From Styela clava (lineage: Eukaryota): a stretch of DNA of 64,000 bases. The stretch covers positions 10,788,001-10,852,000 of the forward strand of contig NC_135254.1 in the NCBI RefSeq assembly GCF_964204865.1, written 5' to 3'. Of the stretch, positions 5,753-64,000 are shown piece after piece. Under the pieces are notes generated by a model. That model saw only the letters and a program-made list of their open reading frames with translations. It did no database searches and was not told where the DNA came from. A program made the position numbers and the translations under genes. Numbering within the stretch: the stretch's first letter is position 1; every line of letters starts with the position of its first letter.

Positions 5753-8700
5753 TTAATTGATGTACGGATGTTCTTTTGTTGTGCTATTATTCATTTCTTC
5801 GTATTGATGATCTCCGTCTTTTATTTTCTCATAATTATGCGGGATTTCATAATTTTCTTCTTTCTCTTCTCTTAACTCATAATTTCCGGAGTTCAGTTGT
5901 GATGTTTGAATTTCATCAAAGTTTTCATAATAACTCGGGACGTCATTAACAACCCTATTCATCTCTGAAAGACGTTGTGGTTGAGTTGCGATTTTTTGAG
6001 AATTCCTTCAGTAAACAAAAAATAAGTTAGAATTAATTAATAAGTAGGATTTTAAATAAGAAACATTGGATTTGTTTTCGGAATTGCTTCTACCATAGAG
6101 GAGTTAGACAAAACAATCGACGAAAATGTTAGAGCCCAGTATTGCAGACATTGTCCCAGACATTGAGATTGCGCATACAGCTGTATAAAGAGACACACCT
6201 TACTGATTCAATTAAGAGTGAATACTCCAAATTTTCGGAAAATATACACATTTTGTTGTAGTATCGAACATTTCTCACCTCATTTTTTTGTTTCTACAAA
6301 TCAGCGAACCAATTCCAAATAGAATGATTGCAAGAATCAATGTGACTATGGATGAAATAATTGCAACCAATAAATTGTCGTGGCCTGCAATATATTTCAA
6401 CATATAGTAAGAAGAAGCATAAACGTTAAAAAAATTATCAGCATTGAACACAGGTTAAACATGAGAATCAGAAAGTCAGTGAGCATTTTATGTAACCACA
6501 AAATAGTAGTTTTAAAAACTCTGATTTTGTGCACTTAAGACTAATGTCTCTTATAATTTGTAAGCTATATAATCTTACCACAAGAAGTCGTTGTAGTAGT
6601 AGTGATTGCACTAGAGGGAAAGAAAATGTTTATCTTCGTAGATTCTGTGTTATTTGCATTGGCAGACAATGTGGAAGTATGTGTCATGTCATTGAGAGTT
6701 GTAAATTTATGATAAATATTTGTTGTTGTCATTTCAGCAGGCGCCGCGGTGGACGTTGTACTACAGGCAGTGTCTCTTGAACAATTGGTCGTCTGAAGAA
6801 AGTAATTGTGTTTAGCAATTTTTCGATACAATATATGTACGATAATATTTGTATATTCCAACATTTATTTAAATCCGAAGTTTAATGGTTGAACGTTCTT
6901 CAAAAAGTTAAACAAATTTAAAAATGCTCACAAAAATATTAATTCACACGCTTATGAAAAATAACGTCGGGCGCCCTGAATAAGAACTACTAGATATTCA
7001 CTTTTACGACTGCGGCTTATACGCTGTGAAATAGTAAAAACTATTCACACAACATAGAATGATGATCCTTTTTTTTTGAACCTTTTAGAAAATCAGAAAT
7101 TATTAACTTACTACAAATAATGGCATTTTTTTTATTATTTCTTACCTCAAAATTAGAACCAATGCAAATATTGGGCCCCGTTCTTCCCGAGTCAATGCAT
7201 GTTCGATTACGTACTTTCATCATTGAGCTGCAGTTACATGTACTCAACGATGACCAGGTTTCCCAGTATCTTCCTGCACAGTGTAAAGATTTAAAACAAA
7301 AGTTTTTTTGCCTGTTTTGATTAGAATGGCTGTATTTTTGTACGTAGTAAATAGGTTTAAACTTAAATAGGAAAAATTGCCAATTGCTTCTTATTCGCAA
7401 TAAACCCTTCGAAACTCTACAAATATCGATGACTTGCCCATACACGCCTTCTCAAGCTGTAGTGCAATACGTCCGCAAACATGGTCGGCGGAGAAAGACG
7501 CAAACGATAAGCCATTAAGTGAACCACTCCGTGTCGACGAGAAGTCCAACACTCTTGCACATTGTCACATCCCTCATGAGATTCGAACCAGGGGCGACTA
7601 TACCATTGGGCAAGGTAGGCTAAAGCCTTGAAGCCTCTAACCTCGTAGGCCTTAACAATCAATTTTAAGCTCATATTCACTGTAAATCCTTTTTGAATTG
7701 TGAAGCCTTCAGAGTTCCAGAATAATGTCACTTTAAAACTTTATATTTTTATTATTCACGGTAATAATTCCAAATATTTACCGATTGAAAGATTAAAAAA
7801 TTTGAAATATGGCCGAATAAATGATTTTGTAATAATACATCAACTTGAAATCCCTATTATGTTATATCCCATGGTTTAAATTTGTCCCAGATTCGAACCT
7901 GCATTCCAGCCGATCTAAGTATATTCTCCATTATTGTATTAATGCACTTGTTTTGTCGAATTTACAAGCGGTGACCGGGCTCCTGATGCAAATGTCTTTA
8001 GATTGTAGTAGGCCCGTGAGAGATGTTACATGATTTTTCTTTTTTTTTACTCAAAGCGTCTCCCTGATAACTCAGATAAACATTCCTGTTAAAATCTTAC
8101 GACTTTAGTGTTGGTACTAAGTTGGCGATATAGTTGCACAATGACAGTGAAACTTGAAGCAAACATTATAATAATCATTTATGCACTAATATTTAATCAA
8201 GAGTAGTTAGTTTTGAACGGAATATTTATGATAGAATTCATAGTCGCACTCACTAGGAATAAAAAAAAATCGTATCTGATTAAAATACGGGCGGTCGCTG
8301 AAATGCCAAGTGCCACTGAAATCATACCGTATTTTGTTGGCGCAAAGAGCAACAGCGAATACCTGTTGATGCGATACTTGAAGTTATTTAAATTAATGTT
8401 ATAAAGTTTATATAAACTAACGATCAGTAAACATTGGTATGATTTAAATGAACTAAATTAAAGTCAATGGCATTAAAATACATAAATAGTTATTTGTATA
8501 AAGAAAAAATGACATAATCTACAAATTAAGTAGACTTATTACATTAAAAGTTTGTTACCGATTAATCGTTGACATACAAATTCAGTTGGTGCATTCGCAG
8601 CGCAATCGACGTCATACCACGGTACATTTGCAAAATACGCGTTAAACCACCCCATAGCACCACAAGATTGGGTACTCTCACTAGAAGGTTCTCCTGAGTT

Positions 8701-9379
8701 CCAGTTAGTGTAGGTTAGTTCTGAATTGTCATTCCATATGAAGGTATTACTTGTGCCAACTTCCTTCAATCCAATATAAAATCCATAGGGTTGTCCTGTG
8801 CACAATAAAATGCCTTATCTTAGGGTAACGTTTTGTCGTGTGTAATATTTATCCAATATGAACATGGCTGATTGGGGCTGTTGAACATAATTGGAAACAT
8901 GTGCGAACACTTGAATACTGATGAATTAAGAATTCATAAACCAATGTATGGGGATTTCTCGCGCAAATCCCAAAACCCATGAGCAAAAGATTCTAATGAC
9001 CATGATGATAAATAACCTTAAGTAAATTCATTCAGGGATTTGAAATAAAAAGTGAAATGTCCTATTTACCTGAGGTAGCTGAGACTTGATTCTGAATAAA
9101 CGTTTGAATCTCGCTCGTTTTAATCATTGCCATCTCACCATCATTGTTTTTACAGAATGTTTCACCATCGGCATATGGTTTTATATCATCTTTTCCGGAT
9201 ACGTAATATTGGTAACTTCCAAATGCATTCCACTCACCTCTACCTGGTTCGCAAAAATAAAAAGTTTATGAATAAGCAAATAATTTGAAAGACATGATAT
9301 ATAGTATATACCAACCTGCGTTAACGACAGCAATCATCCAAGGAAATAATCCAATGTATATAAAAAGTTTCTCCTTCAT
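5753..9379 (-). CDS. Receptor A1: signal peptide-CTLD1-TSP1-mucin stalk-TM-acidic Tyr tail, ~391 aa (exons 9379-9316, 9243-9070, 8795-8559, 7273-7146, 6792-6579, 6384-6279, 6005-5753)
   Basis: Exons are phase-compatible and total 1176 nt. Signal MKEKLFIYIGLFPWMIAVVNA; CTLD (FC..GEMAMIK, FYIGL, WNSGEPS, WYDVDC, FVCQ); TSP1 (WETWSSLSTC..RNRTC); Thr-rich stalk; TM LLVAIISSIVTLILAIILFGIGSLI; tail motifs YENF, YELR, YEIP, YEKI, YEEM, YIN. Confidence 0.88.
7420..7915 (-). mobile_element. tRNA-derived SINE fragment, interrupted by a MITE
   Basis: Reverse-strand B-box GGTTCGAATC; body resembles the SINE at ~33950-34225. Boundaries approximate. Confidence 0.55.
7589..7890. mobile_element. hAT-like MITE
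   Basis: Starts CAGGGGCG and ends with degenerate GTCCCAG; perfect 8-bp TSD attcgaac (7581-7588 and 7891-7898). Confidence 0.6.
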
Positions 9380-16595: not shown

Positions 16596-16666
16596 GCTGT
16601 ACTTGGGCATATGACAATGGCAAGAAAAGCCAACACTGCTTGAAAACACAATCAAACTCAGTTCAG
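16596..16666 (+). pseudogene. Orphan exon downstream of VWA2 (GCTWAYDNGKKSQHCLKTQSNSVQ)
   Basis: AG/GT-flanked and homologous to 3877-3947. Confidence 0.5.
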
Positions 16667-18769: not shown

Positions 18770-21700
18770 TCAAGCATCATATTCATTTTCAGGCATTGAA
18801 TTGATGTACGGATGTTCTTTTGTTGTACGATCATTCATTTCTTCGTACTGATGATCTCCGTCTTTTATTTCTTCATAATTATGTGGGATTTCATAATTAC
18901 CTTCTTTTTCTTCTCTTAACTCATTATTTCCGGAGTTCAATTGTGATGTTTGAATTTTATCATATTGTACATAAGAAACCGGGACGTCATTAACAATCCC
19001 ATTCATCTCTGAAAGACGTTGTGGTTGAGTTGCGATTTTTTTAGAAATTCCCCTGTAAACAACAATAAACTTGAAATAATTCACACGTAGGCTTTTGAAT
19101 AAGAAACAATGGATTTTTTTTTTTATTGAATTGCTTCTAATAACATATATTAGCTAAACGTCATCGTGATCGGACGAAAATGTTAGAGCCCAGTATTTAA
19201 GACATTGTTCCAGACATTGAGATTGTTACTGCTGTATAAAAGATTTTATTTAACTTATTCAATTGAGAGGAAATACTCAAAATCGTTTAAAACTTACACA
19301 TTTTATTGTTGGATCGAACAATTCTCACCTCATTACTCTGCATCTACGAATCAGCAAAACAATTCCAAATAAAATGACTGCAAGAATCAATGTGAAAATG
19401 GATGAGATAATTGCAACCAATAGAATGTTGTGTTCTGCAATATATTTCCATATATAATAAGAATCATAAACCTCAATAAATTTATCAGGTGCGACCACAA
19501 ACAACTACCTAACAGTACAGAAAACGGGTTAAATATGAGTTGTAAAAGACAAAAAGTCAGTGAGCATATTGAACCACAAAATAGTAGTTTAGAAAATCAA
19601 ATTATAAGCACTTGAGACTAATGTCTCTTATAATTTGTAAGCTATATAATCTTACCACTAGAAGTCGTTGTGGTAGTATTGATTGCACCAGTGGGAATGA
19701 GAATGTTTATCTCAGTAGTTTTTGTGTAATTTGCATTGGCAGACAATGCGGAAGTATGTGTCATGTCAGTAGGAGTTGTAAATTCATGATATTTATTTGT
19801 TGTTGTCATTTCAACGGTTGAAGGGGTGGGCGTTGTTTCACAGGTAGTGTATCTTGAACAATTGGTCGTCTGAAGAAAGTAATTGTGATTTAGCAATATT
19901 TCGATTCAATATATGTACGATAATTTTTTATTTATTTCAGCGGTTATTTAAATCTGTATAATGTTCTTCAAAAAGTTTAAAAATATAAAAAAGCTCACAA
20001 AAATATTGATTCACATGCTAATGAAAAATATCGAAAGTGAATAATTCAGATGAATCAGAAACCTTTTTGGTAATTCGTCAATAGCCAGGTCCTGCGACCT
20101 GAATCAGAAATATTGAAGATTCACTTTTGAAAGTGCAGCTTATACATTAATATAGTAAAAACTAATAAAAAAAACATAGAATGATAATCATTTTTCTTTT
20201 AAGCACTTTAGAAGATCAAAAATTGTTAAATTACTACAAAAAGTGGCTTTCCCTATTTTTTACCTCAAAATTAGAACCAATGCAATTATTGGGCCCCATC
20301 CTGCTCGAGTCAATGCATGTCCGATTTCTTACTTTCATCATAGAGCTGCAGTTACATATACTCCACGATGACCAGGTTTCCCAGTATTTTCCTACACAGT
20401 GTAAACATAATCATACGTACGATTCCTCTTTTTATTGATTTTATTCGTGGTCCATATTCCAACTATATCATATTCTAAACTTTATGCTCTTTTAATTTGT
20501 TGAATCTTACAACTAAATATAGATTCAGAGCCAGGTTTTTTTTGTCATAATTGAAACTAAGTTAAGTTGGAGTTCGTGTAAATTTGTATTCCTTTTCGCC
20601 GTTTGAATTCGTCTCAACTCGCTTGTCACCAGACATTTTACTCACCGATATGGCGTTGACACACCAATCCTTTCAACCCTGTTGCTCCAGTGTCACAGTC
20701 CATCGTATGCCATAGAAGATTTGCGTCATAAGTTTTTTGTTCACCTATCGATACACAAGTCTGTGTTCCACTATCAGTATCATGATTGTTTGGTTCTCCT
20801 TCATCCCAACGAATGAATGAAAGGTTTGTTCCGTCGTTCCATTGAAACATCGACTTTGATTTGTCATAAACAAGTCCAATGTAAAATGTGTATGGTTCTC
20901 CTGTAATAAGACATATCATATCGTCACGCTAATAATCGAATTGCGTAAGTCATTTTTGGCGATTTCGAGTTTTTTTTATAAATTAGGTATTTATGTAATG
21001 CTGCGCACCTGTCTGTTAAATCAGATTTTATTTTAAGAATTCCGAAACCCATAAAAATGGAGATTTAGTATTACAGGCACATTTGTGCAATTGTTTCGTC
21101 ATAATGAATTATCATTGTTACCGCAGGACTATTGTGACGTCACAAAGGCAAAATAACCTCGGCCAAGTATTTTCGAGTTTTTGCATCTCGGATTCTAGCT
21201 TAGCGCGTATTAATTTGAATTTTTACTACAGTATAGGAAGACGTGCACTTGTGATATTCACTGTCCGAGTCCAATTCACCTTGGTTGGCTTTTATATTGG
21301 GTGCATTGCTGTTTTATTCTTTATATTTATTCTTAGTCTAATTTCGGTGGATGTGCAGAACATGTTATATCGATGAAATATATATTTTTAAACATAAAAA
21401 ATAATGTAATTGAAACTGATTAGCTATTTTGGGGATTAGACATTGTAGATACTGAGAATTACATTCGTTTTTGGAATGTTTTGTTTTCAGGACTTGTGCA
21501 TATAGTAAAGATGCAAAATTGCGTATGTCCCCAAGTCATACACACATTTCTGCCTAAGTCACAGTGCGCCATTATGACGTCACAACCTAAATCCGGCTAC
21601 GATCAAAACATTGAACCATGGCAAATCATTGACTCTCAATGGCACAACAATATCATTAGGAAGTTTTTTACGTTTTTCTCAAAACTGCTAAAAATGACTT

Positions 21701-25985: not shown

Positions 25986-26897
25986 TTAGACGTCTTTTGT
26001 CACAATGACATATTCATCACCTTTTGGACCAATAACTGTCCTTTGTATTCTATTCTGCCTTCTGACTGCCGTGGTCTTATCAATTTCCTCGTATACATCC
26101 TGTTCACATGATTTAAAACTTGGATTGACCGGTGTTGCAACTTTTATGTAGTCATCTTCAAGACTCCCTTCTTTAGCTAGAGATGGACGGATAAAACATT
26201 TTTGGGGATGTATTTATTTGTTTTTGAATAACGTTTAATTTTAACATTGTAATTATTTTCATCATCGTTGTAATATTGAGTGTCAAATTGGGACAATTTC
26301 TCGAGTGCAGAATACATGTTTTGAAGAGAATCGACTTACATATATCACGTACCTTGGACAGAAGTAAATTCATAAAGGTTCGTGCTTTGAGTTGTTTTTG
26401 TTGATCGGGTTGGTATAATATATGTCGATGCCGTTGAAAAGATTTTGTCTACCGTAGTCTGAGAACTGGTTTTATCCGATGTCGATATTGCCTCTAGAGT
26501 TGTCTGCTGGACTGATTGGTTGACGAAGTGCAAAGCAAAGACAGTCGCCTTATCATAAACTGTTGGGGCGATGTTGTCAGCGTTTGCAGGTGATGTTGTC
26601 GATTCGTCCAACCCGAAACCAGATGAGCCCAGAACAGCTATTTAAAAAATCACAATAACTAAGCTTCAACATTTATGATACTTGAGTCATTCAGAGTAAT
26701 TTTTTATAAAAACACGAAAACCCTGATACATTTTTATTATTTATTTCACATCTTCGATTCTAGAAAGTAAAGTTTTGGTGCTATCTAAATCTATATTATG
26801 CAAATTTTTTAATTTATATTGCAACAGTATTGCAAAACTCTTACTTGTAAATTCCCTGACACAGAAGATCGATCCAGTAAAAGAAGAAGAATCGCAT
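25986..26897 (-). pseudogene. C': internally deleted pseudogene of receptor C (exon 1 26897-26845 frameshifted, exon 2 26637-26353, tail remnant 26189-25986)
   Basis: Exons 1-2 match 59561-60115. A 4-bp gatc duplication frameshifts exon 1. The CTLD and TM exons are missing, and intron 2 runs directly into a 67-codon Tyr-motif remnant (DDYIKV, DVYEEI, DEYVIV) ending in TAA. Confidence 0.8.
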
Positions 26898-38900: not shown

Positions 38901-39578
38901 ATTATCCTTCCTCATCCTTTCTCCTGGTTAGACACATAAATTGATTCGGCATACCATAGGGATCCGACAAAACTAAGATTTACAAATATGGGTACGCGAC
39001 TTAAAAAGTTTGGGAAACCCTGCTTCAGATTAATGGAAAGTTATGTAAGGTTGTATGTAAACATGGCTGGTTAGGACTGTTGTACATAATTGAAAACAGG
39101 TAAAACAAATACGTAAAGACTGACGAATTAAAAATTCTCAAACCAACGTATTGAGAATTCCAACACAAATCCCAAAACGCATGAACAAAGATAAAAATCA
39201 TAATGTTAAATAACCTTAAGCAAATTCATTTCGGGATTTGGGGTAAAACGTGAAATGTCTTGTTTACCTGAGGTAGCTGAGATTTGATTCTGAATAAACA
39301 TTTGAATCTCGCTAGTTTTTATCATTGCTATCTCACCATCATTGTTTTTACAGAATGTTTCACCATCAACATAGGATTTTTTATCATCTTTTCCAGATAC
39401 GTAGTATTGGTAACTTCCAAATGCATTCCACTTACCTCTACCTTGTCGTAAAATAAAGAGTTTATGAATAAGCACATCATTTGAAAGTCATGATGATATA
39501 TAGTATATGCCAACCTGCGCTAACGACGGCAACCATCCAAGCAAAAATCCCAACGAATATCAAAAGATTCTCCTTCAT
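29972..39578 (-). CDS. Receptor B1: SP-CTLD1-TSP1a-linker-TSP1b-short stalk-TM-ITIM-like tail, ~617 aa if decayed parts are skipped (exons 39578-39515, 39441-39268, 38792-38556, 37820-37690, 35934-35868, 33268-33141, 32685-32610, 31496-31346, 31226-31129, 30699-29972); alternatively a pseudogene
   Basis: The listed exons are open and phase-compatible (1854 nt). The model requires skipping the dead CTLD2 remnant and using the internal GTGAGT donor in the mucin exon. Confidence 0.65.
31975..32609 (-). pseudogene. Decayed long mucin-stalk portion of B1
   Basis: Homologous to B2 54116-54720 but has in-frame TAA at 32451-32449 and 32439-32437, a frameshift, and a deletion of the distal splice donor. 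Confidence 0.8.
33950..34225 (-). mobile_element. tRNA-derived SINE nested in the hAT element
   Basis: Reverse strand has A-box-like gtggcccatcgtgctaag and B-box-like ggttagaatc; it interrupts the hAT dimerisation-domain remnant. Confidence 0.65.
34399..35276 (+). mobile_element. Second hAT (Charlie group) deletion derivative, nested
   Basis: TIRs caggggtctcaaactc / gagtttgagacctctg; near-TSD (c)cactaat / cgactaat; frameshifted transposase N-terminus RKVGDEHRQFQK/WEMQYFFVEHRSIPTCFICTVKDAVHTEYNL at ~35045-35180. Confidence 0.8.
35513..35607 (-). pseudogene. Truncated remnant of the first CTLD2 exon in B1
   Basis: Homologous to B2 52527-52620; CGA->TGA stop, 1-nt deletion, and loss of the rest of CTLD2. 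Confidence 0.8.
36461..37659. mobile_element. Non-autonomous hAT element in B1 intron 4
   Basis: TIRs cagtggtgggattca / tgaatcccaccactg; perfect 8-bp TSD gttatata; empty sites in A2 (~22845) and B2 (~51215). Confidence 0.9.
37007..37423. mobile_element. ~204-bp MULE-like MITE containing an inverted copy of itself (37113-37316)
   Basis: Outer 9-bp TSD gacattaac and inner 9-bp TSD tatgggttc; subterminal repeats tacatttgaaccca. Confidence 0.85.
38818..39022. mobile_element. hAT-like MITE in B1 intron 2
   Basis: Imperfect TIRs cagaatttcccaaact / agtttgggaaaccctg; imperfect TSD ctttagag / cttcagat; absent in A1, A2 and B2. Confidence 0.75.
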
Positions 39579-49517: not shown

Positions 49518-52500
49518 ATGAATGAGAAACTTTTGATATACATTGGATTATTTGCTTGGATGATTGCTGTCGTTAGCGCAGGTTGGTATATATTATATAT
49601 CATCACATCTTCTAATTTTGTGCTTGTTGATAAACTCTTTATTTTTGCGACCAGGTAGAGGTGAGTGGAATGCATTTGGAAGTTATCAATACTACGTATC
49701 TGGAAATGAAGATATAAAACCATATGCTGATGGTGAAACATTCTGTAAAAATAATGATGGGAAGATGGCATTGATTAAAACGAGCGAGATTCAAACGTTT
49801 ATTCAAAATCAAGTAACAGCTACCTCAGGTAAATAGGACATTTTACGTTTTACCCCAAATCCCCGAATGAATTTTCTCAAGGTTATTTATCATCATGGTC
49901 ATAAGAAATTTTGTTCATGTGTTTTGGGATTTGCGCAAGAATCATTCATACGTTTATTTAGAAATACTAATATTACTAATTTGTCAGTCTTCATGTATTT
50001 GCACATGCTTTCAATTATGTCCAACAGCTATAATCAGCCATGTATACATGCAACAAATATTACACACGACAAAACTTTTTATTACTACAAGGCATTTTAT
50101 TGTCTACAGGAACACCCTATGGATTTTATATTGGATTAAAGGAAGTTGGCACAAGCAATACCTTCATATGGAATGACAATTCAGAACTAACTTACATCAA
50201 CTGGAAGAAGGGTCAACCTTCTAGTGAGAAACCTGAACCGTGTGTTTCTATGGGGTGGTTTCACACGTATTATGCAGATCTACTGTGGTATGACGTTGAA
50301 TGCGTTGCGAATGCACCAATTGGGTTTGTCTGCCAGCGATTAATTGGTAAAATTTTGTTCTCTATTTTGTTTATATTGTCTAGACTTCTGTTTTATGTAA
50401 CAAATCGCTGTCTTAACTTTGTAAAACACAAAAATGATAATCTTTTTGCAAATAACTATTTATATATTTTGATGCCATTGACGTCAATTTAATCTATTTT
50501 TATCATGCCAAGGTTTACTGCCCCATAGTTTATAGCATTAATTTTAAGTTATTAAAGCATCTCATTAACAGGTATTTGCTGGTGGTGATTGCACCATCAA
50601 AATACTGTATGATTTCATGGACACTATACATTTCTGCGACCGCCCGAGTTTGAGCAAATGCCCCTAAGAAAATTGAGAATTGAGTTATCTGGGTCCAATG
50701 TTTTAAATTCAACTGGATGAAATATGTTTATTCGCGAAAGCAGTTGCACAATATCATTTATTTGCGGCCAGATGAATTTTCAGTTTTATATGAAACAAAA
50801 CTGCTAAAAACCTGTCAGCGGTTCAATTTCAATTTCATTAAAAATGTTTCTTACAAAACTAACTACTTTTAGCTATTAGTGCAGAAAATATTCTGAGAAA
50901 GTTTTTAAGTTTTCAGTAATGTCATCTTATCACTAATTATACCTTGTACAGCTATGCTATTGTTTCCATCGCTGCTACTGTATTAACTTGAGTTAAATTT
51001 ACTGATATAAAATTCTCAGAATACTCAATTGTACAAAATATATTTTCTCTGTTTTTTTCTGCAGGCTGGAATTGGGGATCATGGGAGTCTTGGGGAAGTT
51101 GTGAATGCCCGGGAATGAGACAGCGTAACCGAACTTGTGTTGACAGCGGAAGAATTGGTCCATACTCATGTAATGATACGTCAACACAATCGGAAGTAAA
51201 CTTGTTTTACATATATAACTCATCATGATTGTCATTCCGTTCAAAATGCTTGCTCATTACCTCGTTGTATTAATAAATATCACATTAAAGTTTAGGATTT
51301 TATAAAGTTCTAACATGTCGATTAGTGTGTCGTTTCAAAACTAACTCAAAAATAGAAATACATTTTTTTATGCTTACCGTTGAGACACGCTTACGTTAAA
51401 TAGCTATTGTTTGGTTGATTTTTGTACTCAACTCAACGACATTGCCACACAGGTAAATTTATTTGAGTCAGTTTAGTCGTATTTAGCTATTAATTGAAAC
51501 AGATTGATTAATGTAATAAAATAAGTCCATATGACAGTTCTAATTTTAAATGTAACTTGCAAATCCAGTCTGCGCCGCATCAATTTGGATTTCATTGTTA
51601 CATTTTTCTATTTTTTTGGATCATGTAATAAATTTCAGAGTTACAGTTAATTTGATTAAAACACGTACATGTACGGTTGAACAAAATGAACGTTGTTTTT
51701 AGATATGCGCGCCATCTGTTTCCTGCAATGCAACTATGCCTTTGATTCCACTAGGTGAGAATGAGAACCTATTCTAGAATTAGGTTGTTATGTTTTCATT
51801 TCCCAGCAAACTGACCACATAGTACAGTTCTTGCGAAAATGAGATAGTGATATGAACAATGGGCTCTGTTATTCTCTTTCACATGAGTCATGAACCAGTT
51901 TCTATCAATTATCTTTCTCTAGTGAAACTGTATAATTTTTTTTTTATTGTAACTTTGGCACGAATATATATATTTTTTTTATTGGCTGAAAAGCAATATA
52001 GACTGAGTATATACAGATACACGGTACTCTGTACTGGTAACGGAACCGTAAGGGTACCTGTACCAAGCGTAACCGGTAAAGTAGGTTACCGTTGTCGTTT
52101 ACTGATAATGTTGAAGGACAGCGTCAACGACAGTAGATTCAAAGCTCTAAAAAAAAAATTTAAATTACATATTTGAACCTTTGCTGTTGCTGCTCAATAA
52201 CCAGCTTTGGTCCCCCGCGACTACTCTTTCCCAGTAAATCTGTGTAAATAATATTTTCTCGTACTTTGTGTTCGATTGTTGTTAATTTACTGGTTGGAAA
52301 AAATAAACTTGACTTGACTCTAATCGAAAGGTGCTAAAACGACTTACAATCGAAACTTTTAAATGCGTCAATATATCAACGTTTTTCTTTATTATTTACT
52401 TTGGTACTTAAATTAAAGCAAGTGCTTGCGATAATTGATGCTATCTCGCTCAATCGTGCATTTTCATTGCGAATTTATCGAGATACTGATATTGTATAAT

Positions 52501-55500
52501 TATTTGATATTTCATTTGTGAAACAGATCGAGGAAACTGGTTTCCTAACGGAAGTTATGAATATTACGTTTCACCGGGTGGTAGTTCAGGATCTTATGAA
52601 TATTCGAAAACATTTTGCAAAAATAAAGGAAGCGAATTAGCATTGATAAAGAATAAAATAACCCAAGGATTTATTAAAACACTCATTTCTAATGGATCAG
52701 GTACGTGCATTATACGTGCAGTATTAGTTTTTAGCACTGTATGGCAAATTTATTACACCCATGGGTGACGTGAGATGATATTTGAAACTGAGATGCGTAA
52801 TCTGCAATGCCAAAACAATTAATTCGTACGCTTTAACCGCTCTGTCATCGATAAAACGCTTATCCACGCATGTCGCAGCAGTATAAAATAATACGGTATG
52901 TTTTATTACAGGAGAACCATACACGTTCTATATTGGACTTGTTTATGACAAATCAAAGTCGATGTTTCAATGGAACGATGGAACAAACTTGTCATTCACT
53001 CTTTGGGATGAAGGAGAACCAAACAATCATGATTCTGATAGTAGCACACAAATTTGCGTATCGATTGGTAAACAAAAAACTTATGACACAAATCTCCTGT
53101 GGCATACGATAGACTGTATCACAGGAGCAACAGGACAAAAAGGATTGGTGTGTCAAAGAATTATTGGTAATTGCAATTAGTTAATGTCGAAAGTCTCGAA
53201 AGTCACGTTACTGCCCCTCTGACCACTAAAATCGTTTATTCCATTGAACAAACTTGGTAAGTTTCAATTGAATGGAGATTGCTTTATGGGGTATAAAAAA
53301 CATAAAGCTGACTAAAATCAAGTGATGTGGTAAAATGTTATGGCAAACCTTGCGTGGAAATTTAGGCCCTTTTGTGAACCGCTCCCATCGTATTTCTAAA
53401 TTACCATCTAGCTGATCGCATTAATAAAAACGAACTGTTTTGATCTAGGTAAATACTGGCAAACCTGGTCTTCTTGGAGTGAATGTAACTGCTCAACCAT
53501 AATCAAAATGAGAAAACGCACATGCATTGATTCTTCTCGAACAGGGCCCGATGCGTGCGTTGGCAGCCACAATGAGGTATGAAGTAGCTAAATATTCCAT
53601 ATAGGTACATTTTATTTTTTTTTTATCGCCGTCGTGGTTATTCATTGATATCTTCAGTTTTGTACTGCAGTGTAGCTTGAACTCGATGTCAAATTTATTC
53701 ACAGCTATATTAAATGATATTTTTTTATTCTTAAATAACCACGATATGAAGTGATGGCATTCTTCATTCGATGTAGTTTTTTAGCATGTTTAAGCTGATC
53801 TTGAATCTCGAAATAATGAAGCGGATATAATATAACTTATTTCCACGACATGGTCAAATCGTTTTGGCGGTAGCGGAGTGATACTATTGTATATCATAAC
53901 ATGTGCACATAAAATGAAATGTTGATGCTTTCCGGGTATGTTATAATAACTTTTGCTTTTAAAAACCATGTTTGGAAATTGTAATAAAACCGATCGATTT
54001 CAATTTTCTTTCAGTTTGTGTCAATATTTTTAACAGACTGCAAATTGTACAAAAGACCCAACTTGTTATACGACTACTGTTGCGGAAACAACATTACCAT
54101 TAACTACAACTGCTGGTAAGTTAACCACCGACGTAATGACTATCATGACTACTGGTTCTACAGATGAAAATAATGTTGTGACAAATGCAACCTCTAACTT
54201 GCAAGGCACTTCTTCTTTACTCGCAGAAACCGAACAAGACCAAATGACGACAGTGACCTTCCAATTCACATTTGAAACTAAAATTAACAGCACTGAAGAA
54301 ATGGGCATAAATTTAACCCAGTCAACTATTCATCTCCCCGAACCAATGACAACCACAGGGATGGACAGCCACGTTGTTAATACAGAAAGCACGACGATTA
54401 CAGGGCCGTCCCCCATGTCCCTCGTACAGACAAATGAGAGTAAAACGACGATGGAAAATAAAATGACAACTTCTGATAGCGGTGGAATAACAAGTAGCTT
54501 ATTGAACACCACTATCCCTACAAGTACAATAATACAATCAACGAGCGAAACTAGCCAAGGAAGTAATTTCGAAGTGACATCGCCAATTTTGTCTATGGCA
54601 ACAACGGTAATGGAAACAACGACAGGAAGAATTACTCAATCTATTTCCACTCCCACAAAAACTGATTTCACGTCTACTGCCGTCACTACGAGTCCAGAAT
54701 CTAGCAGCAATCAACACGCAACTTCAATTAGTGTTACAACCACAACGACGAAGGAACATAAAAGCACGGCCACAATAAAACAAACAAAGACGCAAAAGAG
54801 TGCTACTTTTGAATCGACAACTGAAGACGAAACGTCGAGTAAATTTCACAAAGATTATATATTTCAAAGCAGAGAATATTTCAAAATTATATTTTTTTTA
54901 CGTATTATTTACATATTAACGTATTTGGAGTAAAAATGTAAACGTGTCGCCACAATATAAATGTAATGTCACAAAACGCAAACATGGAAGTCATAATTCA
55001 TTTGAGGGCAAAATCAATTTATACACTCCGATAGCAGAATTAGAAATACTTCATTCATATCTTTCTTTTAACTCAAGTGACTTGCTACAGATGAGAATCG
55101 CGGAAAAAAAATGCGATTTATAATTTTACGGGCTTGATCTTATACTATTAGCTGCAAATAATCAACAAAATACATTTGATCAGAGTTAATATTGGCAAAA
55201 TCTGCAAAGAAACCAAACTCAAATAATACCAACAAACGGAACGTGGGATAATTATAACGGCATTAGCAATAGTTTAGCATAACAAATCATAAATTTATAG
55301 GTTAGTTTCGCCTTTTGTACAATTGAGTCATTTACTAAGATACACGCGAGAACGCGGCCAACATTCGATCATTGAAAAAGCCAATCAGAATGTTTAAATG
55401 TTAACATACAATCATGATGAAGCGGTCTAATAATTTTCGGACGATTAATTTCCAAATAGGAGCTTAGGAAAAATTTTAAATCAAATTTCAGCTCGCGAAA

Positions 55501-57260
55501 TTGTGTAAGCTTGTCTAAATGAACATTATCTATTAATTAAATTTCTGATTTTGTATATTGTACTGATATCAATTCCTATATTATCTCACACAGAAATTCC
55601 TGACATTTCGACGATTGGTATTCTTCGTCCATCTACACCCGCTTCACAAACATCAATCATTGGACCAGTCGTGGGAACTATCGGAGGGATTCTTCTTTTA
55701 GCGCTTATCGTTGTTTTTATACTTTCAAAGCAACTCAAAAAAAGGTAGTATATCCAACATTATCTGTTATGAATAGTGAATGAATACCAAATATGAAGGT
55801 ACACTCATTTCACAGAGAATGCATATAATCTAAAGTTTTGCTTTCAGAAGAGGTAGTGGAACCATAAACAAGGGTGGGCGTGGCAATTACAATGAGGGGT
55901 TAGAAATGGAAGAACAACTTAATCCGAGAGATATAATGTCAGAGCGTAAGTTAATGTAACTTCATTTTAAGTATTACGTCAACGCATTGTATCTGGGTTG
56001 ATGAATTACCGTACTTTACTGTCCACCACATGCTGCTAAATGTATGACAATTAAGAGGAAATACTAATTCCGACATGCACCGTATGATTATCTAAACTAT
56101 AGGCCTTATAGGAAAAACAGTGATTTCATGGAAATATATTCATTCTGAGAATGTATAGCAAATAAGAATAGTATATATAGAAGCGTAATACAAGATTGAG
56201 TTTTACACTAAAATCACAACTTATTGCAACGAGCCCAACCGATATTAAATAAATCTTTCTACGTAGAAATTTCAGAATTGTTGTTACTTATGAACATAAT
56301 TATGAGTTATTTATGTTAAAAAACGATACACCCAGTTATGGTGATTATATTATAACTAACTCAAGTTGGTAATAAGGTATGAGTCCGTATTCAAATCTGT
56401 AGTCGGTTAATTTGAATGGCTCGGACCTAATTTTCATCTCCTCCAGATGAAAACGTTTCAAGTGATTCAAAATTGCTGCTACATATTGGTATATAATATC
56501 ACTTACATGTTTTACTGCTACAGATCCCGAAGATGTGGAATCAGGTCGAGACAATTCTGAAAAAACGGAAACTCTTCGTTATCAGACGTTTTCGAACCCT
56601 GCTGGAAATTCAGACAATAATTCTCTCTTACCCAAAGATCAAGTTGACTCGTCAAACGGGCAAGATTCACCCTACGCCGTTGTCGATAACCATCAGAATC
56701 AGATAAACGATGTGACCACAGAAGGCAACGACAATGCAATGTATACTGCTGTGAACAAGACAAAATCGAAAAAGTTAACCGAATCCTCAAATGTTTCGGA
56801 TGCGGTGGATGTAACAGAACCCCAATATGCTGTTGTTGATAAGCAAAAAAAAGGCGAAATAATTAATGTTTCTGCTAACCCTGACGAGAACTCCCCTGTA
56901 GCTTATGCAACGGTTCAAAAAACCAATGTTGAGGATTCTAAAAAAATGTCAAAATCAGAAAACCCCTCTGATGAAAACCAAGAGTCTGGTCCGACTTACG
57001 CTACCGTGGAGAAATCGAAATCAAAAGGCCCTGTGAAACAGAAAACACCTTCAGATGGAGACGACAAACACGACAATAAAGTGACATACGCTGTTGTACA
57101 GAAACCCAAAAAAGATGATTCTTCAAACGTCATTGAAGTAACTTATGCAACGGTCAATAAACCCAAAACAGATCAGAGTTCCGATGTCAAGGGACGTGCT
57201 GAAGGGGCTGACATTGAACTAAATGACGACCCATATGCAATGATTGACAAGGGTAAATAA
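49518..57260 (+). CDS. Receptor B2: SP-CTLD1-TSP1a-linker-CTLD2-TSP1b-long mucin-TM-multi-ITIM tail, ~1000 aa (exons 49518-49581, 49655-49828, 50110-50346, 51065-51195, 51703-51754, 52527-52700, 52912-53166, 53449-53576, 54037-54838, 55594-55744, 55848-55945, 56524-57260)
   Basis: Twelve phase-compatible GT-AG exons, 3003 nt. Two CTLDs (QPS/WYD and EPN/WHT); two TSP1 (WGSWESWGSC, WQTWSSWSEC); ~260-aa S/T stalk; TM IIGPVVGTIGGILLLALIVVFIL; ITIMs SPYAVV, VAYATV, VTYAVV, VTYATV. Confidence 0.9.
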
Positions 57261-59560: not shown

Positions 59561-62500
59561 ATGCGATTCTCCTTCTGCTCATGGATCTTATGTGTCACGG
59601 AATTTACAAGTAAGAGTTTTGCAATATTGTAAATAAAAATTTAAAAGTTTGCGGCATATAGATTTAGACAGCATCAGAAATTTACCTTATCAAGATACCA
59701 AAAAATTTGTAAATATTTATTTCGAGTCTTATTATATCACCAGATATGTGGATTACCTGTAAATGGTTTGTAAGAAGCGAAGGTGTGATAAACCAATGGG
59801 AATTAAAATGTAGCAGGGCTTTCATGTTTTATATTCCGATTGAATCAAGTATGTATGATAAATGTTAAAACTTAGTTGTTGTTATTTTTTAAATAGCTGT
59901 TCTGGGCTCATCTGGTTTCGGGTTGGACGAATCGACAACGTCACCAGTAAACAATGATAACATCGCCTCAACTGTTTATGATAAGGAGTTTGATAAAACC
60001 ATATCCCAGACTACGGTAGCCAAAATATTCTCAACTGCATCGACATCTAGTGCATCAACCCGAACAACAAAAGCAACCCAAAGCACGAGTCTATATGAAA
60101 CTACTTCTGCCCAAGGTACGTAATATATTTGGACAATTTTCTTCAAGGCATATTTTCTTCGCTGGAGAAAGCCAGAAAGTTGACACTCAATATTATCACA
60201 TCGATGATGGAAATGATTACAATGTTAAAATAAAACGTTATTCAGAAATAAATATTTACATCCCCAAAATTGCTTTTTCCAAAGGTCTTAGAGTTTACGA
60301 AATTATTAAACAAAGTTGCAAGATTAAAAAAAAGTCTATTTAAAATATTTGTCTCAAATTTTAGCCGATTTATTTTTAATTTTTTTCATACATTTTAAAA
60401 CTGTAAACAACCGCAGTGTACCAATGGTTTTGTTTGAGTGATAAATTATATAAAATTTTCACAAAATACCAATAGGATGGGTTGTAGGATAATTGATACT
60501 GGTGCAAAAACTCGTCATAGGAACTATCAATTTCGGTTTTGTACAAAATACAAAAACAAGATGACATTTTAGCTTTAATGATATTGTGCTGGTTTGAGTT
60601 TAAAACATTTCTTTAATTAGAAAACTAGTCTTTTTGACATGCCCTAAACTGCATCCAAAATTAGATTATTTTGACAAAATGCATATGGCCAGATGGAGTC
60701 ACCTACGCCACATTTTCAGTGATTAACACAGCCTATGTCATATCATTCAATAAATATAATTATGTGTATGTTCTTCATTATACCCTTTTTCTGTTTGTTT
60801 TTACATCCGAATAGATCGTCGTGGGAGTTGGCAGAGGCTAAATAATATCGAATATTACGTATCTAAAGCTAGAGAGATAAAGAATTTCGACCAAAGTAAA
60901 GAGTTTTGCAGGCAACAGGGTGGAACGCTTGCTCTTGTTAAAACAAGCGAAACACAGAGTTTCATTGCAAGTCTTGTGATCCGAGACTCAGGTATTTTTA
61001 TAAGCTATGACATCGACTGAGTATACTTTTCTTGATGCTTTCCTTGGCGTTTAAAATTTTTCTCCTTCTGACATCATATTTCAATGCTAATTTTAATTTT
61101 ATAAATTTGAATTAAATTTTTAACCAATATTGAAAATTGGTAGTAATGTTTTCGACACAACATTTTGTGAAAATATATATATATATTATAGATTTGTTTA
61201 ATTTTGAAGTTACTAAATTATTGGATGTTATTTTATCTTGAACTTACTTTAAACGAGCAAAGCTGCGTCTAAGAAGTCATTTATTTTTCAAAATTTCACC
61301 TAAAAATGTGTAATATTTATTTTCAATTATCCAATTGTTTGTTTAGGCATAAATTTCTCAATTTCATTACTGTATAACAGTACAATTAATTTTTTTTAAG
61401 ATGCAACAAAGAATTTATTTAAACCTGTAAAATTCAAAATAAAAAATTAAAAACAGCAATTCATTTCACAGGTACGCCATATGGGTTTTTCATTGGTTTG
61501 AAAAGAGTGAACAATAACAGCTTTGCGTGGATTGATAACGAGGCTGAATCGTATGGGGCATGGCATTCTGGAGAACCTAATAATACGGATGAAAATGAAG
61601 ATTGCGTTATTATGGGTTGGATTCACGAATTTATGAAAAATCTCCGATGGAGAGACTACAAATGTGGCGTGGAAAAATTCGCACCAACCGGATTCATATG
61701 CCAAAGGATATTAGGTAAAATAACATAAATTTTGAATTAAATTATAATAATCTTTTCAAATACAAATACATTGGAGAAATTTTTAGACTGGGAAATATTA
61801 AAAAGTAAAACAAGTACCAAATAAACATTGATAAAATCTTTCACAGGGATGTGAACGCTTATCAAATATGACATAAATTCACATCGCAAAAGATAAATTG
61901 TAGAAAAATAAATTAAGGTTAAAATATGCAATTATGACATTGTAATTGTAAACAAAAATTAAAATTTGTCCCAAGTCCAAAATCAAAAATTGTCTTTCGC
62001 CTTTGAAATTTAAAAAGAATACATCGTCATGGTGAAATCTTTTTTCAACCTCTTGTGCTTTTCTTCAGTGAAGCTTGAATTTTTATATTAAAATTTGAAG
62101 TTGGTCAAAGTACCTAATTGATTTTTTTTCGTTTTCTACTAATCACGTATTTTTCATCAAAACTTCTATTGGGCATTTGTTTGACCATCTGACCACTGCT
62201 AGTTTGCATGTTGTCAGTGATAATTGTAGGTACGATCACAACCTTTTTTCGAATACCAGGCAAATGGGGAACAATACGATTGGCCATGAGCAACGACAGT
62301 TTTGTACTTAAACTTTTCTCAAATATAACAATATAATATTTATTTTCTATTTCAGAAACGACTGTCATTCCTACTACGGAGTCGTTCACAAGCGCTTTGA
62401 AAACTACAGCTTCAAAATATATTTCGACGGAAGGGGAACTCACAACAAAATCGTCAACTTCAGAAATCTTCGAACCCACGTCCGGGACTCAACAAATTTC

Positions 62501-64000
62501 AACAAAAGAATCGACTGATCTTATTTTATGGACAGAAAGACCGAATTCTCAAACTACAACAATTGGTCTTGTGGTCGGCGGGATATCGCTGTTGCTTCTA
62601 GTTGTGATAACCGTACTTGGATATTGCTATCGAAAAAGGTACATTGAATCGGGTGTTGGGCTTGTTAACGTTATCGTAGATTCAATATACATTTTGAATT
62701 ATGTTTTATAGGCAATCTAAGAATGAATTACTGCAGAGAATACAAAAAACAAATCTTGGTAAGTACCGTAATATATGGTATATAATAGCTTTGAGAAGCA
62801 TATAAAAATCTTTTTGGCAATATCCATTTTCTCCAGAAAACAAGTACAAGAATACAACATGTAATGTCACAATATTATCGAATTCAGCAATAATCGCGCA
62901 TCTACCGTTGTTAAAAAATATTTTTACTCTGTGGTTCGCATTTTAGCGTACACTTCAAAGTTGTAATTTAACACTTTTGCAGATGTGGATGACTATGTGG
63001 AGTTACATCAAATTAATATTGAAGAACCCCGTTCTACAAAACCAGTACAGAAAGATCCTAGTTCGCCAACGCCTCTAGAATATATAAAAGATCGTGACAC
63101 GTCTACAAAAATATCCGTAAGAGATTCAACATATGTGTTGATGACGTCTCCTTCAATAGAAATCAAATCTCGCTCTGAAAGCAATCGCTCATTCGTCGAT
63201 ATCATGCTTCCAACCACAAATGTAACTCCAACAGACAATACCATTACCAGTCCTGAAGCAGAAGCATACGAGTTTATGTCTGGTGGATTTGAAGAAGATG
63301 AAAAAGAAAAAAATCTGATTTTGGGCAAAACGCAATTGACAAGCGTAGGCCAGGAAACAACAGAAGGATGCTTATACGAAATCATGACAAAGGGAACAAC
63401 GAACGAATCAAGTAATGTTAATAAACATTCGAACACAAGTCAAAGTTCAAAAATACATTTGAGAATGGATAATTCAAATAAGGATAAGCAAATGTCATCG
63501 CATATTTTGAAGGAAAAAGGCGACATCAAAAATATTGAAACACGTGAAAAATCAGCTCAAGGGGACAAATCGAATTTACAAGAAGATTTGCAGGGTAAAA
63601 CTATACAGAAAGTGGAAAAAATCATTCAGTTACCATTACCTTCAATACCGAAGTGTGGAGATGAAAACAAGACCACTGATGAGTACGAATTGATGCCGTA
63701 TGGCGAGATAACTTTTCAAAATGAACCTCCTAGTAAAGCTGATGTGCTGCCGCCTGAAGTTATCATGACAAAACAAAATTCAATGAGAATAAAGACCAAC
63801 GATAGTAGCAAAATAGTGCAGGGCAGTACTCTGCCCATCTTACCCGAAAACACAGACATAGAAATCGATAATGACATTACGCCATATGGTGCAATTGAAT
63901 ACGAGGAAAAATCTACGGAGACCGAAGAATCGCTGAGCAATAAAGAAAATCTCAGCAACGATTCAAATAAGAATAAATCAGTCATACAGAATATGCCTTT
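59561..64000 (+). CDS. Receptor C: SP-mucin-CTLD-mucin-TM-long Tyr-rich tail, 3'-partial (exons 59561-59609, 59897-60115, 60815-60991, 61472-61714, 62356-62638, 62712-62758, 62983->64000)
   Basis: Phase-compatible exons; CTLD with FFIGL, WHSGEPNN..EDC, WRDYKC, FICQ; TM IGLVVGGISLLLLVVITVLGYCY; last exon stays open to the window end with DDYVEL, YVLM, YEFM, YEIM, YELM. Confidence 0.87.

What the first reader, a model, noticed from the sequence alone, without database searches (positions are those of the whole stretch)
5753..64000. Candidate paired activating/inhibitory C-type-lectin-TSP1 receptor system
Seen: four receptors share closely related CTLD/TSP1 ectodomains but end in two non-homologous stalk-TM-tail blocks. 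A1/A2 have ~85-95 aa acidic tails with YEIP, YE(K/E)I-x6-YEEM (ITAM-like spacing) and YIN. B1/B2 have ~275 aa tails with repeated YAxV motifs, and B2 has four canonical ITIMs. Receptor C adds a third tail type. Established: ITIM (S/I/V/LxYxxI/V/L) recruits SHP phosphatases, YEEI suits Src-family SH2, YxxM binds PI3K p85 and YxN binds Grb2; same ectodomain with opposite tails defines paired receptors (KIR, Ly49, Siglec). Inference: an invertebrate self/non-self or pathogen-recognition cluster using a type I CTLD-TSP1 scaffold that I do not recognise as a named family. Caveat: A2 also has one ITIM-matching VQYDKI.
Basis: partly seen in the sequence, partly recalled or inferred. Interest (0 to 1): 0.92.

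Follow-up and report, generated by a model that had tools for sequence, protein, structure and literature searches.

The report
Sea-squirt lectin receptors with alternative tails
The window holds the end of a roughly 340-kb Styela clava cluster of about 24 membrane lectin receptors whose fast-evolving binding domain is joined to unrelated signalling tails, one carrying inhibitory-type tyrosine motifs; this is the layout of vertebrate paired immune receptors on a different protein scaffold, but expression and function are untested.

Summary
The window (Styela clava, contig C5) carries five type I receptor genes. A1 and A2 have 83- and 93-aa acidic tails with YEIP, YE(E/K)I-x6-YEEM and YIN. B1 and B2 have about 275-aa tails of repeated YAxV, and B2 has four canonical ITIMs. 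C has a 458-aa tail with four YxxM and a hemITAM-like motif. NCBI already models B1 and B2 as "uncharacterized" proteins. I built intact all-GT-AG models for A1, A2 and C.

New here:
- The membrane-proximal TSP1 exon splits A from B cleanly, but the N-terminal CTLD1 block is interleaved (AU p=0.0003), so binding blocks have moved between tail backbones.
- Amino-acid replacements pile up in the CTLD1 binding loops (N/S 5.9 against 1.3, p=1e-8).
- Every B tail has ITIMs and no A tail has the B motifs.
- A tandem-SH2 phosphatase gene exists in the genome.

Corrections: the ectodomains are not uniform. A1 lacks CTLD2, B1 lost CTLD2 to a transposon, and C has no TSP1. The A motif is not a canonical ITAM.

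The scan found this cluster before on the adjacent window (s1-812120). No homologue outside S. clava and no paper was found.

The parts
5753..9379 (-). Receptor A1: signal peptide, CTLD1 (two exons), one TSP1, Thr-rich stalk, TM, 83-aa A tail. 7 exons: 9316-9379, 9070-9243, 8559-8795, 7146-7273, 6579-6792, 6279-6384, 5753-6005.
   Evidence: Model built by homology; all junctions GT-AG; intact 391-aa ORF.
18770..24494 (-). Receptor A2: signal peptide, CTLD1, TSP1, linker, CTLD2, TSP1, stalk, TM, 93-aa A tail. 11 exons.
   Evidence: All junctions GT-AG; intact 602-aa ORF. Pfam Lectin_C and TSP_1 on its exons.
18770..19052 (-). A2 tail exon with YEIP, YEEI-x6-YEEM, YIN and one ITIM match (VQYDKI).
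   Evidence: The same motifs are in all 12 distinct A tails read.
29975..39578 (-). Receptor B1 (NCBI LOC144422883, isoforms X1-X3): CTLD1, TSP1, linker, TSP1, shortened stalk, TM, small cytoplasmic exon, 241-aa tail exon. CTLD2 is lost and the mucin exon is broken and bypassed by internal donors at 32610, 32547 or 32487.
   Evidence: Exact spliced match of P0002, P0005 and P0006. One ITIM plus one ITSM left.
33400..35400 (.). Dispersed repeat (transposable element) inside B1, where CTLD2 exons lie in B2 and A2.
   Evidence: 85-95% identical copies on many contigs; 5282 first-look candidates. Only a partial CTLD2a remnant remains, at 35514-35600.
49518..57260 (+). Receptor B2 (NCBI LOC120344507 X2 = P0007): CTLD1, TSP1, linker, CTLD2, TSP1, 230-aa mucin stalk, TM, small cytoplasmic exon, tail exon. 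13 coding exons.
   Evidence: Exact spliced match. Pfam Lectin_C twice.
56524..57260 (+). B2 tail exon: four canonical ITIMs plus YTAV, two further YA(V/T)V and YAMI.
   Evidence: 4 observed against 0.32 expected; none of 2000 shuffles reached 4. Alignment with other B tails.
50196..50300 (+). Hypervariable segment of CTLD1 in B2 (codons 86-120 of the domain), from the EPN-equivalent motif to the WND-equivalent motif. The same segment in A2 is 23715-23819 (-).
   Evidence: Sliding dN/dS of 1.35-2.99 here against 0.04-0.8 elsewhere. Tree-based counts are 121.5 N: 20.5 S against 109 N: 82 S, Fisher p=1e-8. Position checked against solved mannose-receptor and CD23 CTLDs.
59561..64000 (+). Receptor C (runs to 64316, 313 nt of coding sequence past the window): signal peptide, S/T-rich segment, one CTLD (EPN), stalk and TM, 47-nt cytoplasmic exon, 1.3-kb tail exon. 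Exons: 59561-59609, 59897-60115, 60815-60991, 61472-61714, 62356-62638, 62712-62758, 62983-64316.
   Evidence: Own model; all junctions GT-AG; intact 782-aa ORF. The first two exons are the least certain. No database protein found (length limit).
25989..26192 (-). Broken remnant of a C-type tail between A2 and B1.
   Evidence: The block 26189-33311 is an inverted copy of 60280-53406.
20264..20391 (-). Membrane-proximal TSP1 exon of A2, the first exon of the old A-specific C-terminal block. The B2 counterpart is 53449-53576 (+).
   Evidence: A and B copies of this exon form two clades, 100/100 support, 0.46 changes per site apart. A2/B2 nucleotide homology ends within it.

Best explanation
The genes are a young, Styela-specific, birth-and-death cluster of type I membrane recognition receptors. 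There are about 24 genes in C5:10.51-10.85 Mb, and the window holds its right end.

Each receptor carries an N-terminal CTLD1 whose ligand-binding loops are under diversifying selection. It is held away from the membrane by a variable number of TSP1, CTLD2 and mucin modules. This recognition block is joined to one of three old and mutually unrelated C-terminal blocks (TSP1/stalk, TM, tail).
- The B block carries 1-4 ITIMs of the V-x-Y-A-x-V kind, usually with an ITSM and a C-terminal YxN.
- The A block carries YEIP, YE(E/K)I-x6-YEEM and YINS.
- The C block carries four YxxM, YEEI, a membrane-proximal DVDDYVEL and a C-terminal DEYAIV.

Recombination has repeatedly moved CTLD1 blocks between A and B backbones, so similar binding sites are wired to different outputs.

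Inferred mechanism: after ligand binding, Src-family kinases phosphorylate the tails. B tails then recruit the tandem-SH2 phosphatase (SHP-like) and damp the cell. A tails recruit Src-family, PI3K p85 and Grb2-type SH2 proteins directly (costimulatory, CD28/DAP10-like, rather than ITAM/Syk) and drive it. The balance decides the response of the expressing cell, most likely a blood or epithelial cell facing microbes or foreign cells.

Shown: gene structures, domains, motifs, motif partition between classes, block exchange, concentrated replacement changes, and presence of an SH2-SH2-PTP gene.

Inferred: expression, phosphorylation, effector binding, opposite sign of signalling, ligand, cell type.
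For: - Domains and models.
- Cluster size and confinement to one locus: 16 A tails, about 8 B tails (5 open), and 24 open CTLD1b exons, all in C5:10.51-10.85 Mb.
- Motif partition: every B tail read has ITIMs and none has YE[EK][IM]. Every A tail has YE[EK]I and YIN, and all but one have YEEM. Only 2 of 12 A tails show a single marginal ITIM match.
- B2 ITIM count is far above shuffles.
- A and B blocks are unrelated beyond the stalk start.
- The TSP1b exon splits A from B at 100/100.
- The 5' block including introns interleaves them. Holding B together costs 79 lnL units, AU p=0.0003.
- Replacement excess in the CTLD1 loops, which are the canonical CTLD binding site by alignment to solved CTLDs.
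- SH2, SH2 and PTP hits lie in that order on one strand within 4 kb at C8:10921780-10925824.
- In the related styelid Botryllus, allorecognition co-receptors carry almost the same ITIM flavour (VAYAIV, LAYAIV) and hemITAM (DDVYAIL), and the ITAM/ITIM pathway genes are expressed (PMC12582321).
Against: - Only NCBI's models with isoforms hint at transcripts.
- The A motif is not a canonical ITAM, and the A TM has no charged residue.
- Yxx(V/I/L/M) motifs are also AP-2 sorting signals.
- Tyrosine columns are not better conserved than other tail columns (0.86 against 0.90 in A; 0.91 against 0.88 in B). Whole-tail dN/dS is about 0.55, so constraint on the motifs themselves is unproven.
- Two of B2's four ITIMs are B2-specific. 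B1 is degenerate, and three B tails elsewhere in the cluster are broken.
- The CTLDs lack a complete Ca/sugar site.
- No orthologue was found outside S. clava, so there is no deep conservation to lean on.
- Recombination inflates parsimony counts, though it does so for N and S alike.
Confidence: 0.5

Rival explanations
1. These are endocytic or scavenger lectin receptors. The tails are sorting signals, not signalling switches: Yxx(hydrophobic) motifs bind AP-2 and route bound particles or glycoproteins to endosomes, as in the mannose-receptor family. The A, B and C tails would differ in trafficking route or rate.
For: The closest solved CTLDs are those of the macrophage mannose receptor (E=1.7e-20) and Endo180, which are type I endocytic receptors. 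Their non-sugar-binding CTLDs share the GEPS/GSPS motif seen here. Most tail tyrosines fit Yxx[LIVM]. Long mucin stalks are common in scavenger receptors.
Against: One sorting signal is enough, whereas B tails carry six to eight copies of the same xxYAxVxK unit, and the -2 position fits ITIM or ITSM in 2-4 of them. The family has no FNII or ricin domain. The clean partition of motif types between backbones, and the exchange of binding blocks between them, are not predicted by a pure uptake role.
Confidence: 0.2
2. These are cell-cell or gamete/larval recognition and adhesion molecules, for example self-sterility or settlement cues. Diversifying selection would come from sexual conflict or self-incompatibility rather than immunity. 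The neighbouring secreted VWA genes would be their partners.
For: Diversifying selection in the binding loops, fast gene turnover, and repeated head-to-head pairing with VWA genes in the duplicated unit. Ascidian self-sterility loci are also tightly linked receptor/ligand gene pairs (own knowledge, not tested here).
Against: Known ascidian self-sterility genes have other folds (own knowledge). ITIM, ITSM and YxxM tails are typical of signalling in somatic or blood cells. No tissue data exist either way.
Confidence: 0.15
3. The family is largely a decaying or silent gene family. The open frames reflect recent duplication, the tail motifs are internal repeats with no function, and the high replacement rate reflects relaxed constraint.
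For: B1 has a transposon in place of CTLD2 and a broken mucin exon. Three B tails and all C-tail copies but one are broken. Tail dN/dS is about 0.55, and Tyr columns are not specially conserved. No transcript evidence could be obtained.
Against: All 24 CTLD1b exons are open. dN/dS is 0.04-0.3 over the CTLD core and the TSP1 exons, which shows purifying selection. In the loops dN exceeds dS, which relaxation alone cannot give. A1, A2, B2 and C are intact over 7-13 exons with consensus splice sites.
Confidence: 0.1

Closest known systems
Vertebrate paired receptor families (KIR, Ly49, LILR/PIR, Siglec, DCIR/DCAR)
   Same: Clustered, fast-turning multigene family. Near-identical binding domains sit on inhibitory (ITIM) and non-ITIM backbones. 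Binding domains are exchanged between the two by recombination, and diversifying selection acts at the binding site. The ITIM flavour VxYAxV matches LAIR-1/PIR-B-type ITIMs (own knowledge).
   Different: The scaffold is type I CTLD-TSP1-mucin, not Ig or type II CTLD. The non-ITIM members have no charged TM residue and no short tail. Instead they have their own YEEI/YEEM/YIN tail, and a third tail class exists. No functional data.
Botryllus schlosseri fester co-receptors (FcoR), PMC12582321
   Same: Same ascidian family (Styelidae). Clustered, copy-number-variable receptor genes whose tails carry ITIMs of nearly the same sequence (VAYAIV, LAYAIV against VAYATV, VTYATV) or acidic hemITAM-type motifs (DDVYAIL against DVDDYVEL and DEYAIV in C). 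The genes are duplicated as pairs with a second gene family.
   Different: FcoR ectodomains are immunoglobulin-superfamily, and here they are CTLD-TSP1. No sequence homology of the tails was detected (searches found them only in this cluster). Styela clava is solitary and has no known fusion/rejection system (own knowledge).
Mannose receptor family (MRC1, Endo180, PLA2R, DEC-205)
   Same: Type I membrane proteins with tandem CTLDs. These are the best sequence matches among solved structures. The GEPS motif replaces EPN, and the tails have tyrosine motifs.
   Different: No ricin or FNII domains, one or two CTLDs instead of eight to ten, TSP1 repeats and a mucin stalk, and long multi-tyrosine tails.
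CD28 / DAP10-type YxxM / YxNM costimulatory tails
   Same: The A tail has YEEM and YINS. The C tail has four YxxM. These are the classes of motif that bind PI3K p85 and Grb2 (established knowledge; not tested here).
   Different: No exact YxNM. The motifs sit on the receptor itself, not on an adaptor.
Group XIV CTLD proteins (thrombomodulin, CD93, CLEC14A, endosialin)
   Same: Type I layout: N-terminal CTLD, small cysteine-rich repeats, mucin stalk, single TM.
   Different: EGF/sushi repeats instead of TSP1. Single-copy conserved genes, with no ITIM tails.

Membership tests
Paired activating/inhibitory immune receptors (functional class) | Members share closely related ectodomains | tested here: met
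   CTLD1 blocks of A and B genes are 75-90% identical including introns and are interleaved in the tree.
Paired activating/inhibitory immune receptors (functional class) | Inhibitory members carry cytoplasmic ITIMs | tested here: met
   1-4 matches to [SIVL]xYxx[IVL] in every B tail read. B2 has 4 against 0.32 expected. This is a sequence match only.
Paired activating/inhibitory immune receptors (functional class) | Activating members have a short tail and a charged TM residue that recruits an ITAM adaptor | tested here: not met
   The A TM segment is wholly hydrophobic. The tail is 83-93 aa with its own tyrosine motifs.
Paired activating/inhibitory immune receptors (functional class) | Opposite signalling outputs in the same cell | not testable with these tools
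   Needs expression and biochemical data.
ITAM-bearing receptors | Yxx[LI]-x6-12-Yxx[LI] | tested here: not met
   No match in any of the five tails. A tails have YE(E/K)I-x6-YEEM, where the second half ends in Met.
ITIM receptors that recruit SHP phosphatases | A tandem-SH2 tyrosine phosphatase is present in the organism | tested here: met
   SH2, SH2 and Y_phosphatase hits in that order on the + strand at C8:10921780-10925824. Binding is not tested.
hemITAM receptors (CLEC-2, Dectin-1 type) | Single [DE][DE][DE]xYxxL near the membrane in a CTLD receptor | tested here: inconclusive
   C has DVDDYVEL 16 residues after the TM. The acidic run is interrupted, and the protein is type I, not type II.
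C-type lectins that bind sugar through Ca site 2 | EPN or QPD motif together with WND | tested here: not met
   CTLD1 has EPS (QPS in B2) and WYD. CTLD2 has EPN but WHT..D in place of WND. C has EPN and WRD.
Mannose receptor family | N-terminal ricin-type and FNII domains followed by 8-10 CTLDs | tested here: not met
   Pfam finds only Lectin_C and TSP_1.
NK-complex CTLD receptors (Ly49, NKG2, CD94) | Type II orientation (N-terminal tail, C-terminal CTLD) | tested here: not met
   There is an N-terminal signal-peptide exon, and the TM and tail lie C-terminal of the CTLDs.
Botryllus FcoR family | Immunoglobulin-superfamily ectodomain | tested here: not met
   No Ig domain by Pfam. Only the motif flavour is shared.

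The most novel reading that the evidence does not exclude
A solitary tunicate has independently built a three-output recognition system on a CTLD-TSP1 scaffold. The outputs would be ITIM-inhibitory, Src/PI3K-costimulatory and YxxM/hemITAM-like. Hypervariable binding loops are shuffled by recombination between the signalling backbones. Each receptor is co-duplicated with a secreted VWA gene that serves as its ligand or co-receptor, a lectin-based counterpart of the Botryllus fester/FcoR pairs and of vertebrate NK receptor complexes.
Probability: 0.25. Interest if true: 0.85.

Novelty: new variant of a known kind. Interest (0 to 1): 0.66.

Why it matters
Paired receptor logic means the same binding site is wired to opposing signals, with fast turnover and diversifying selection. 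It is regarded as a recurring solution for self/non-self and pathogen discrimination, but outside vertebrates it is documented in very few systems (Botryllus FcoR, Hydractinia Alr).

A lectin-based version in a solitary sea squirt would show how easily the ITIM pathway is recruited to new ectodomains. It would also give a system in which the exchange of recognition blocks between signalling backbones can be followed exon by exon. And it would offer 24 natural variants of one binding loop for ligand hunting.

The family is currently labelled 'uncharacterized' in NCBI, and I found no paper on it.

Tried and rejected
- Homologue searches with the A tail exon and the C tail exon found nothing. Both are limited by the length window: the full A proteins are 391-602 aa and C is 782 aa, outside 0.55-1.75 times the query. 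These blanks therefore say little.
- The whole-library search with the B tail found only S. clava proteins plus one chance hit to a repetitive bacterial-looking protein.
- The structure prediction of P0013 with an 11-row family alignment failed (mean pLDDT 30). No fold search was made, so nothing in this report rests on structure.
Trees and counts therefore rest on 17 of about 24 genes.
- The CTLD1 coding tree alone (405 columns) could not reject B monophyly (AU p=0.15). Only the longer block with introns did.
- A test for extra conservation of the tail tyrosines was negative or uninformative.
- Literature searches for the family, for the LOC and XP identifiers, and for S. clava lectin-thrombospondin receptors found nothing relevant.
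- The joined spliced models of A1, A2 and C were translated and motif-counted only inside scripts. They were not sent to any search, fold or family tool. Searches used single exons by reference or database proteins.
- Complex prediction was not used. Unphosphorylated ITIM peptides with an SH2 phosphatase are outside what that test can judge.

Full report
**Where we are.** The window is Styela clava contig C5:10788001-10852000. It has 32-35% G+C and no gaps. A self-comparison shows that most of it is made of large direct and inverted duplicates.

**What is in the window.**
- Stop-to-stop frames on the minus strand at 18.7-24.5 kb contain two CTLDs, each split into two exons. They also contain two short TSP1-like exons (WxxWxxW, CxC, RxRxC), a Thr-rich stalk, a TM exon and a tail exon.
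- Pfam confirms Lectin_C on all four half-exons and TSP_1 on the second repeat.
- In full-length proteins Lectin_C scores E=1e-25. TSP_1 passes its cut-off in two of them.
- A whole-library HMMER search with the B2 tail exon returned two S. clava proteins. NCBI names them 'uncharacterized protein LOC120344507' and 'LOC144422883'.
- An exact spliced walk places P0007 on 13 exons at 49518-57257 (B2). It places P0002, P0005 and P0006 on 10 exons at 29975-39578 (B1).
- I mapped the B2 exons onto the paralogues and checked every junction. This gave an 11-exon, 602-aa model for A2 and a 7-exon, 391-aa model for A1.
- For C I found a 47-nt cytoplasmic exon that links the TM exon to the 1.3-kb tail exon in frame. 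I also found a candidate signal-peptide exon and an S/T-rich exon upstream. The result is a 7-exon, 782-aa model that ends 313 nt beyond the window.
- All introns in the three models are GT-AG. The joined models were used only inside scripts.

**Corrections to the observation.** The ectodomains are modular, not uniform.
- A1 has CTLD1-TSP1 only.
- A2 and B2 have CTLD1-TSP1-linker-CTLD2-TSP1.
- B1 has lost CTLD2. A dispersed repeat with thousands of genomic copies lies there. B1's mucin exon is broken, and NCBI's three isoforms bypass it through internal donors.
- C has one CTLD and no TSP1.
- Elsewhere in the cluster the same exons are combined into proteins of 553 to 1456 aa.

**The tails**.
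- Lengths after the TM stop-transfer are 83 aa (A1), 93 (A2), 273 (B1), 276 (B2) and 458 (C).
- B2 has four ITIM matches against 0.32 expected. None of 2000 shuffles reached four.
- Eight of B2's ten tyrosines are Yxx[LIVM], mostly within a repeated xxYAxVxK unit.
- Across seven distinct B tails, VVYATV and VTYATV are the common ITIMs, TQYAVV is a common ITSM, and PYANID supplies a YxN.
- SPYAVV and VTYAVV are peculiar to B2. B1 has Cys and Phe at two tyrosine positions.
- All twelve distinct A tails carry NYEIP, YE(E/K)I and PYIN. All but one also carry YEEM six residues after YE(E/K)I. None of them carries a B motif. Two have one marginal ITIM match.
- No tail has a canonical ITAM.
- C has four YxxM (none of 2000 shuffles reached four), YEEI, a membrane-proximal DVDDYVEL and a C-terminal DEYAIV.
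- A and B C-terminal blocks share only about 15 residues at the start of the stalk. Nucleotide homology between A2 and B2 ends inside the second TSP1 exon.

**The cluster.**
- Six-frame searches of the genome find 16 A tails, about 8 B tails (5 open, 3 broken) and 24 open CTLD1b exons. All lie in C5:10.51-10.85 Mb.
- The C tail has one intact copy, the one in this window, plus at least five broken remnants. One remnant is at 25989-26192.
- More distant CTLD relatives lie on other contigs. One of them (P0016) has yet another Tyr-rich tail.
- Right of C come a Kelch gene and a CBM21 gene, so the window holds the cluster's right end.
- All database relatives are from S. clava.

- The membrane-proximal TSP1 exon separates A from B at 100/100 support, with 0.46 changes per site between the clades.
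- The 5' block from the signal-peptide exon to the end of CTLD1, introns included, puts B genes in three places among A genes. The AU test rejects B monophyly (delta lnL 79, p=0.0003). The shorter coding-only tree was inconclusive (p=0.15).
- So the C-terminal signalling blocks are old, and the recognition blocks have been exchanged between them.
- Pairwise dN/dS is 0.2-0.3 for the TSP1 exons and CTLD1a, 0.59 for CTLD1b, and about 0.55 for the tails.
- Within CTLD1, a sliding window gives 0.04-0.5 over the core. It gives 1.35-2.99 over codons 86-120, from the EPN-equivalent to the WND-equivalent motif.
- Parsimony counts on the tree give 121.5 replacement and 20.5 silent changes there. Elsewhere they give 109 and 82 (Fisher p=1e-8).
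- Alignment to solved CTLDs (mannose receptor, CD23) confirms that this is the canonical binding-loop region.
- The two NCBI versions of LOC120344507, from different assemblies, are 91-100% identical in every part except the four CTLD exons, which are 73-81% identical. This may be allelic hypervariability, gene conversion or an assembly chimera. I could not fetch the older DNA.

**Plausibility of the signalling reading.**
- The genome has SH2, SH2 and tyrosine-phosphatase hits in that order within 4 kb on one strand of C8. This is the SHP arrangement.
- In Botryllus, a styelid like Styela, the fester co-receptors carry ITIMs VAYAIV/LAYAIV and hemITAMs DDVYAIL. They are duplicated as gene pairs, and they are co-expressed with the ITAM/ITIM pathway (PMC12582321).
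- The motif flavour here is strikingly close, although the ectodomain fold differs and no tail homology is detectable.

**What remains inference.**
- Expression, phosphorylation, effector binding, the sign of each signal, the ligand and the cell type are all inferred.
- Tyrosine columns are not more conserved than other tail columns among these young paralogues.
- Yxx-hydrophobic motifs also serve endocytosis.
- The A tail is not an ITAM.
- The CTLDs lack a complete Ca/sugar site.
- I therefore give 0.5 to the opposed-signalling reading. Near certainty applies only to the structural statement: a receptor cluster with unrelated tail classes, block exchange, and hypervariable binding loops.

**Relation to earlier scan notes.** The follow-up on the adjacent window (s1-812120) reached the same overall reading for the left part of this cluster. 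I tested it independently here and added four things: the block-exchange test, the site-localised replacement excess, the C gene model and the SHP-type gene. Notes on this window about the A/B boundary, the B1 tyrosine losses, the internal mucin donors and the C tail were checked. The B1 note needs one amendment: VTLAVV is the common state of B tails, not a B1 loss.

Noticed in passing
window 12142-12330, 13557-13703 (+); duplicated blocks 141-4340, 10445-17101, 40566-47543: A VWA-domain gene (Pfam VWA E=4e-10, DGSGS MIDAS-type motif) lies head-to-head with A1. It recurs in each duplicated unit next to the receptors, so receptor and VWA gene seem to be copied together.
   Followed up: partly
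window 33400-35400: A dispersed repeat with 85-95% identical copies on most contigs sits inside B1 where CTLD2 should be. It is probably the event that removed CTLD2 from B1.
   Followed up: partly
P0001 against P0007 (both NCBI LOC120344507; B2, window 49518-57257): The two assembly versions of the same locus differ by 19-27% in the four CTLD exons but by 0-9% elsewhere. This is a mosaic that could be allelic hypervariability or gene conversion from A-type paralogues. P0001's CTLD2a is identical to that of P0008/P0009.
   Followed up: partly
P0011 (LOC144422881 isoform X2), elsewhere in the cluster: An annotated isoform of a B-type gene joins the small cytoplasmic exon to the tail exon in another frame. 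It ends after about 25 residues, giving a B receptor without ITIMs. If real, splicing could switch the inhibitory tail off, as described for Botryllus FcoR3/4.
   Followed up: no
G000:C5:10619666-10635076 (L015-L017), P0008: One A-type gene has the CTLD2-TSP1-stalk-TSP1-stalk module three times in tandem (1456 aa). This shows very recent intragenic exon-block duplication.
   Followed up: no
window 25989-29590 (-) against 57418-60280 (+): The spacer between A2 and B1 is an inverted copy of the B2-C spacer and holds a broken C-type tail. The ancestral repeat unit therefore seems to have been B followed by C, with C decayed in all copies but the last.
   Followed up: partly
L002:5635-6720 (-), i.e. 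1.3 kb right of C: A single-exon Kelch-repeat protein whose N-terminal 100 residues are acidic and rich in tyrosine motifs (VYDYA, EYSIA, IYDYA, IYETI).
   Followed up: no
G000:C18:15692663-15702691, C1:27144822, C3:17078710; P0016: More distant CTLD-TSP1-TM relatives lie outside the cluster. P0016 (LOC120344887) has a 330-aa tail with about ten Yxx[LVM] motifs of yet another kind.
   Followed up: no
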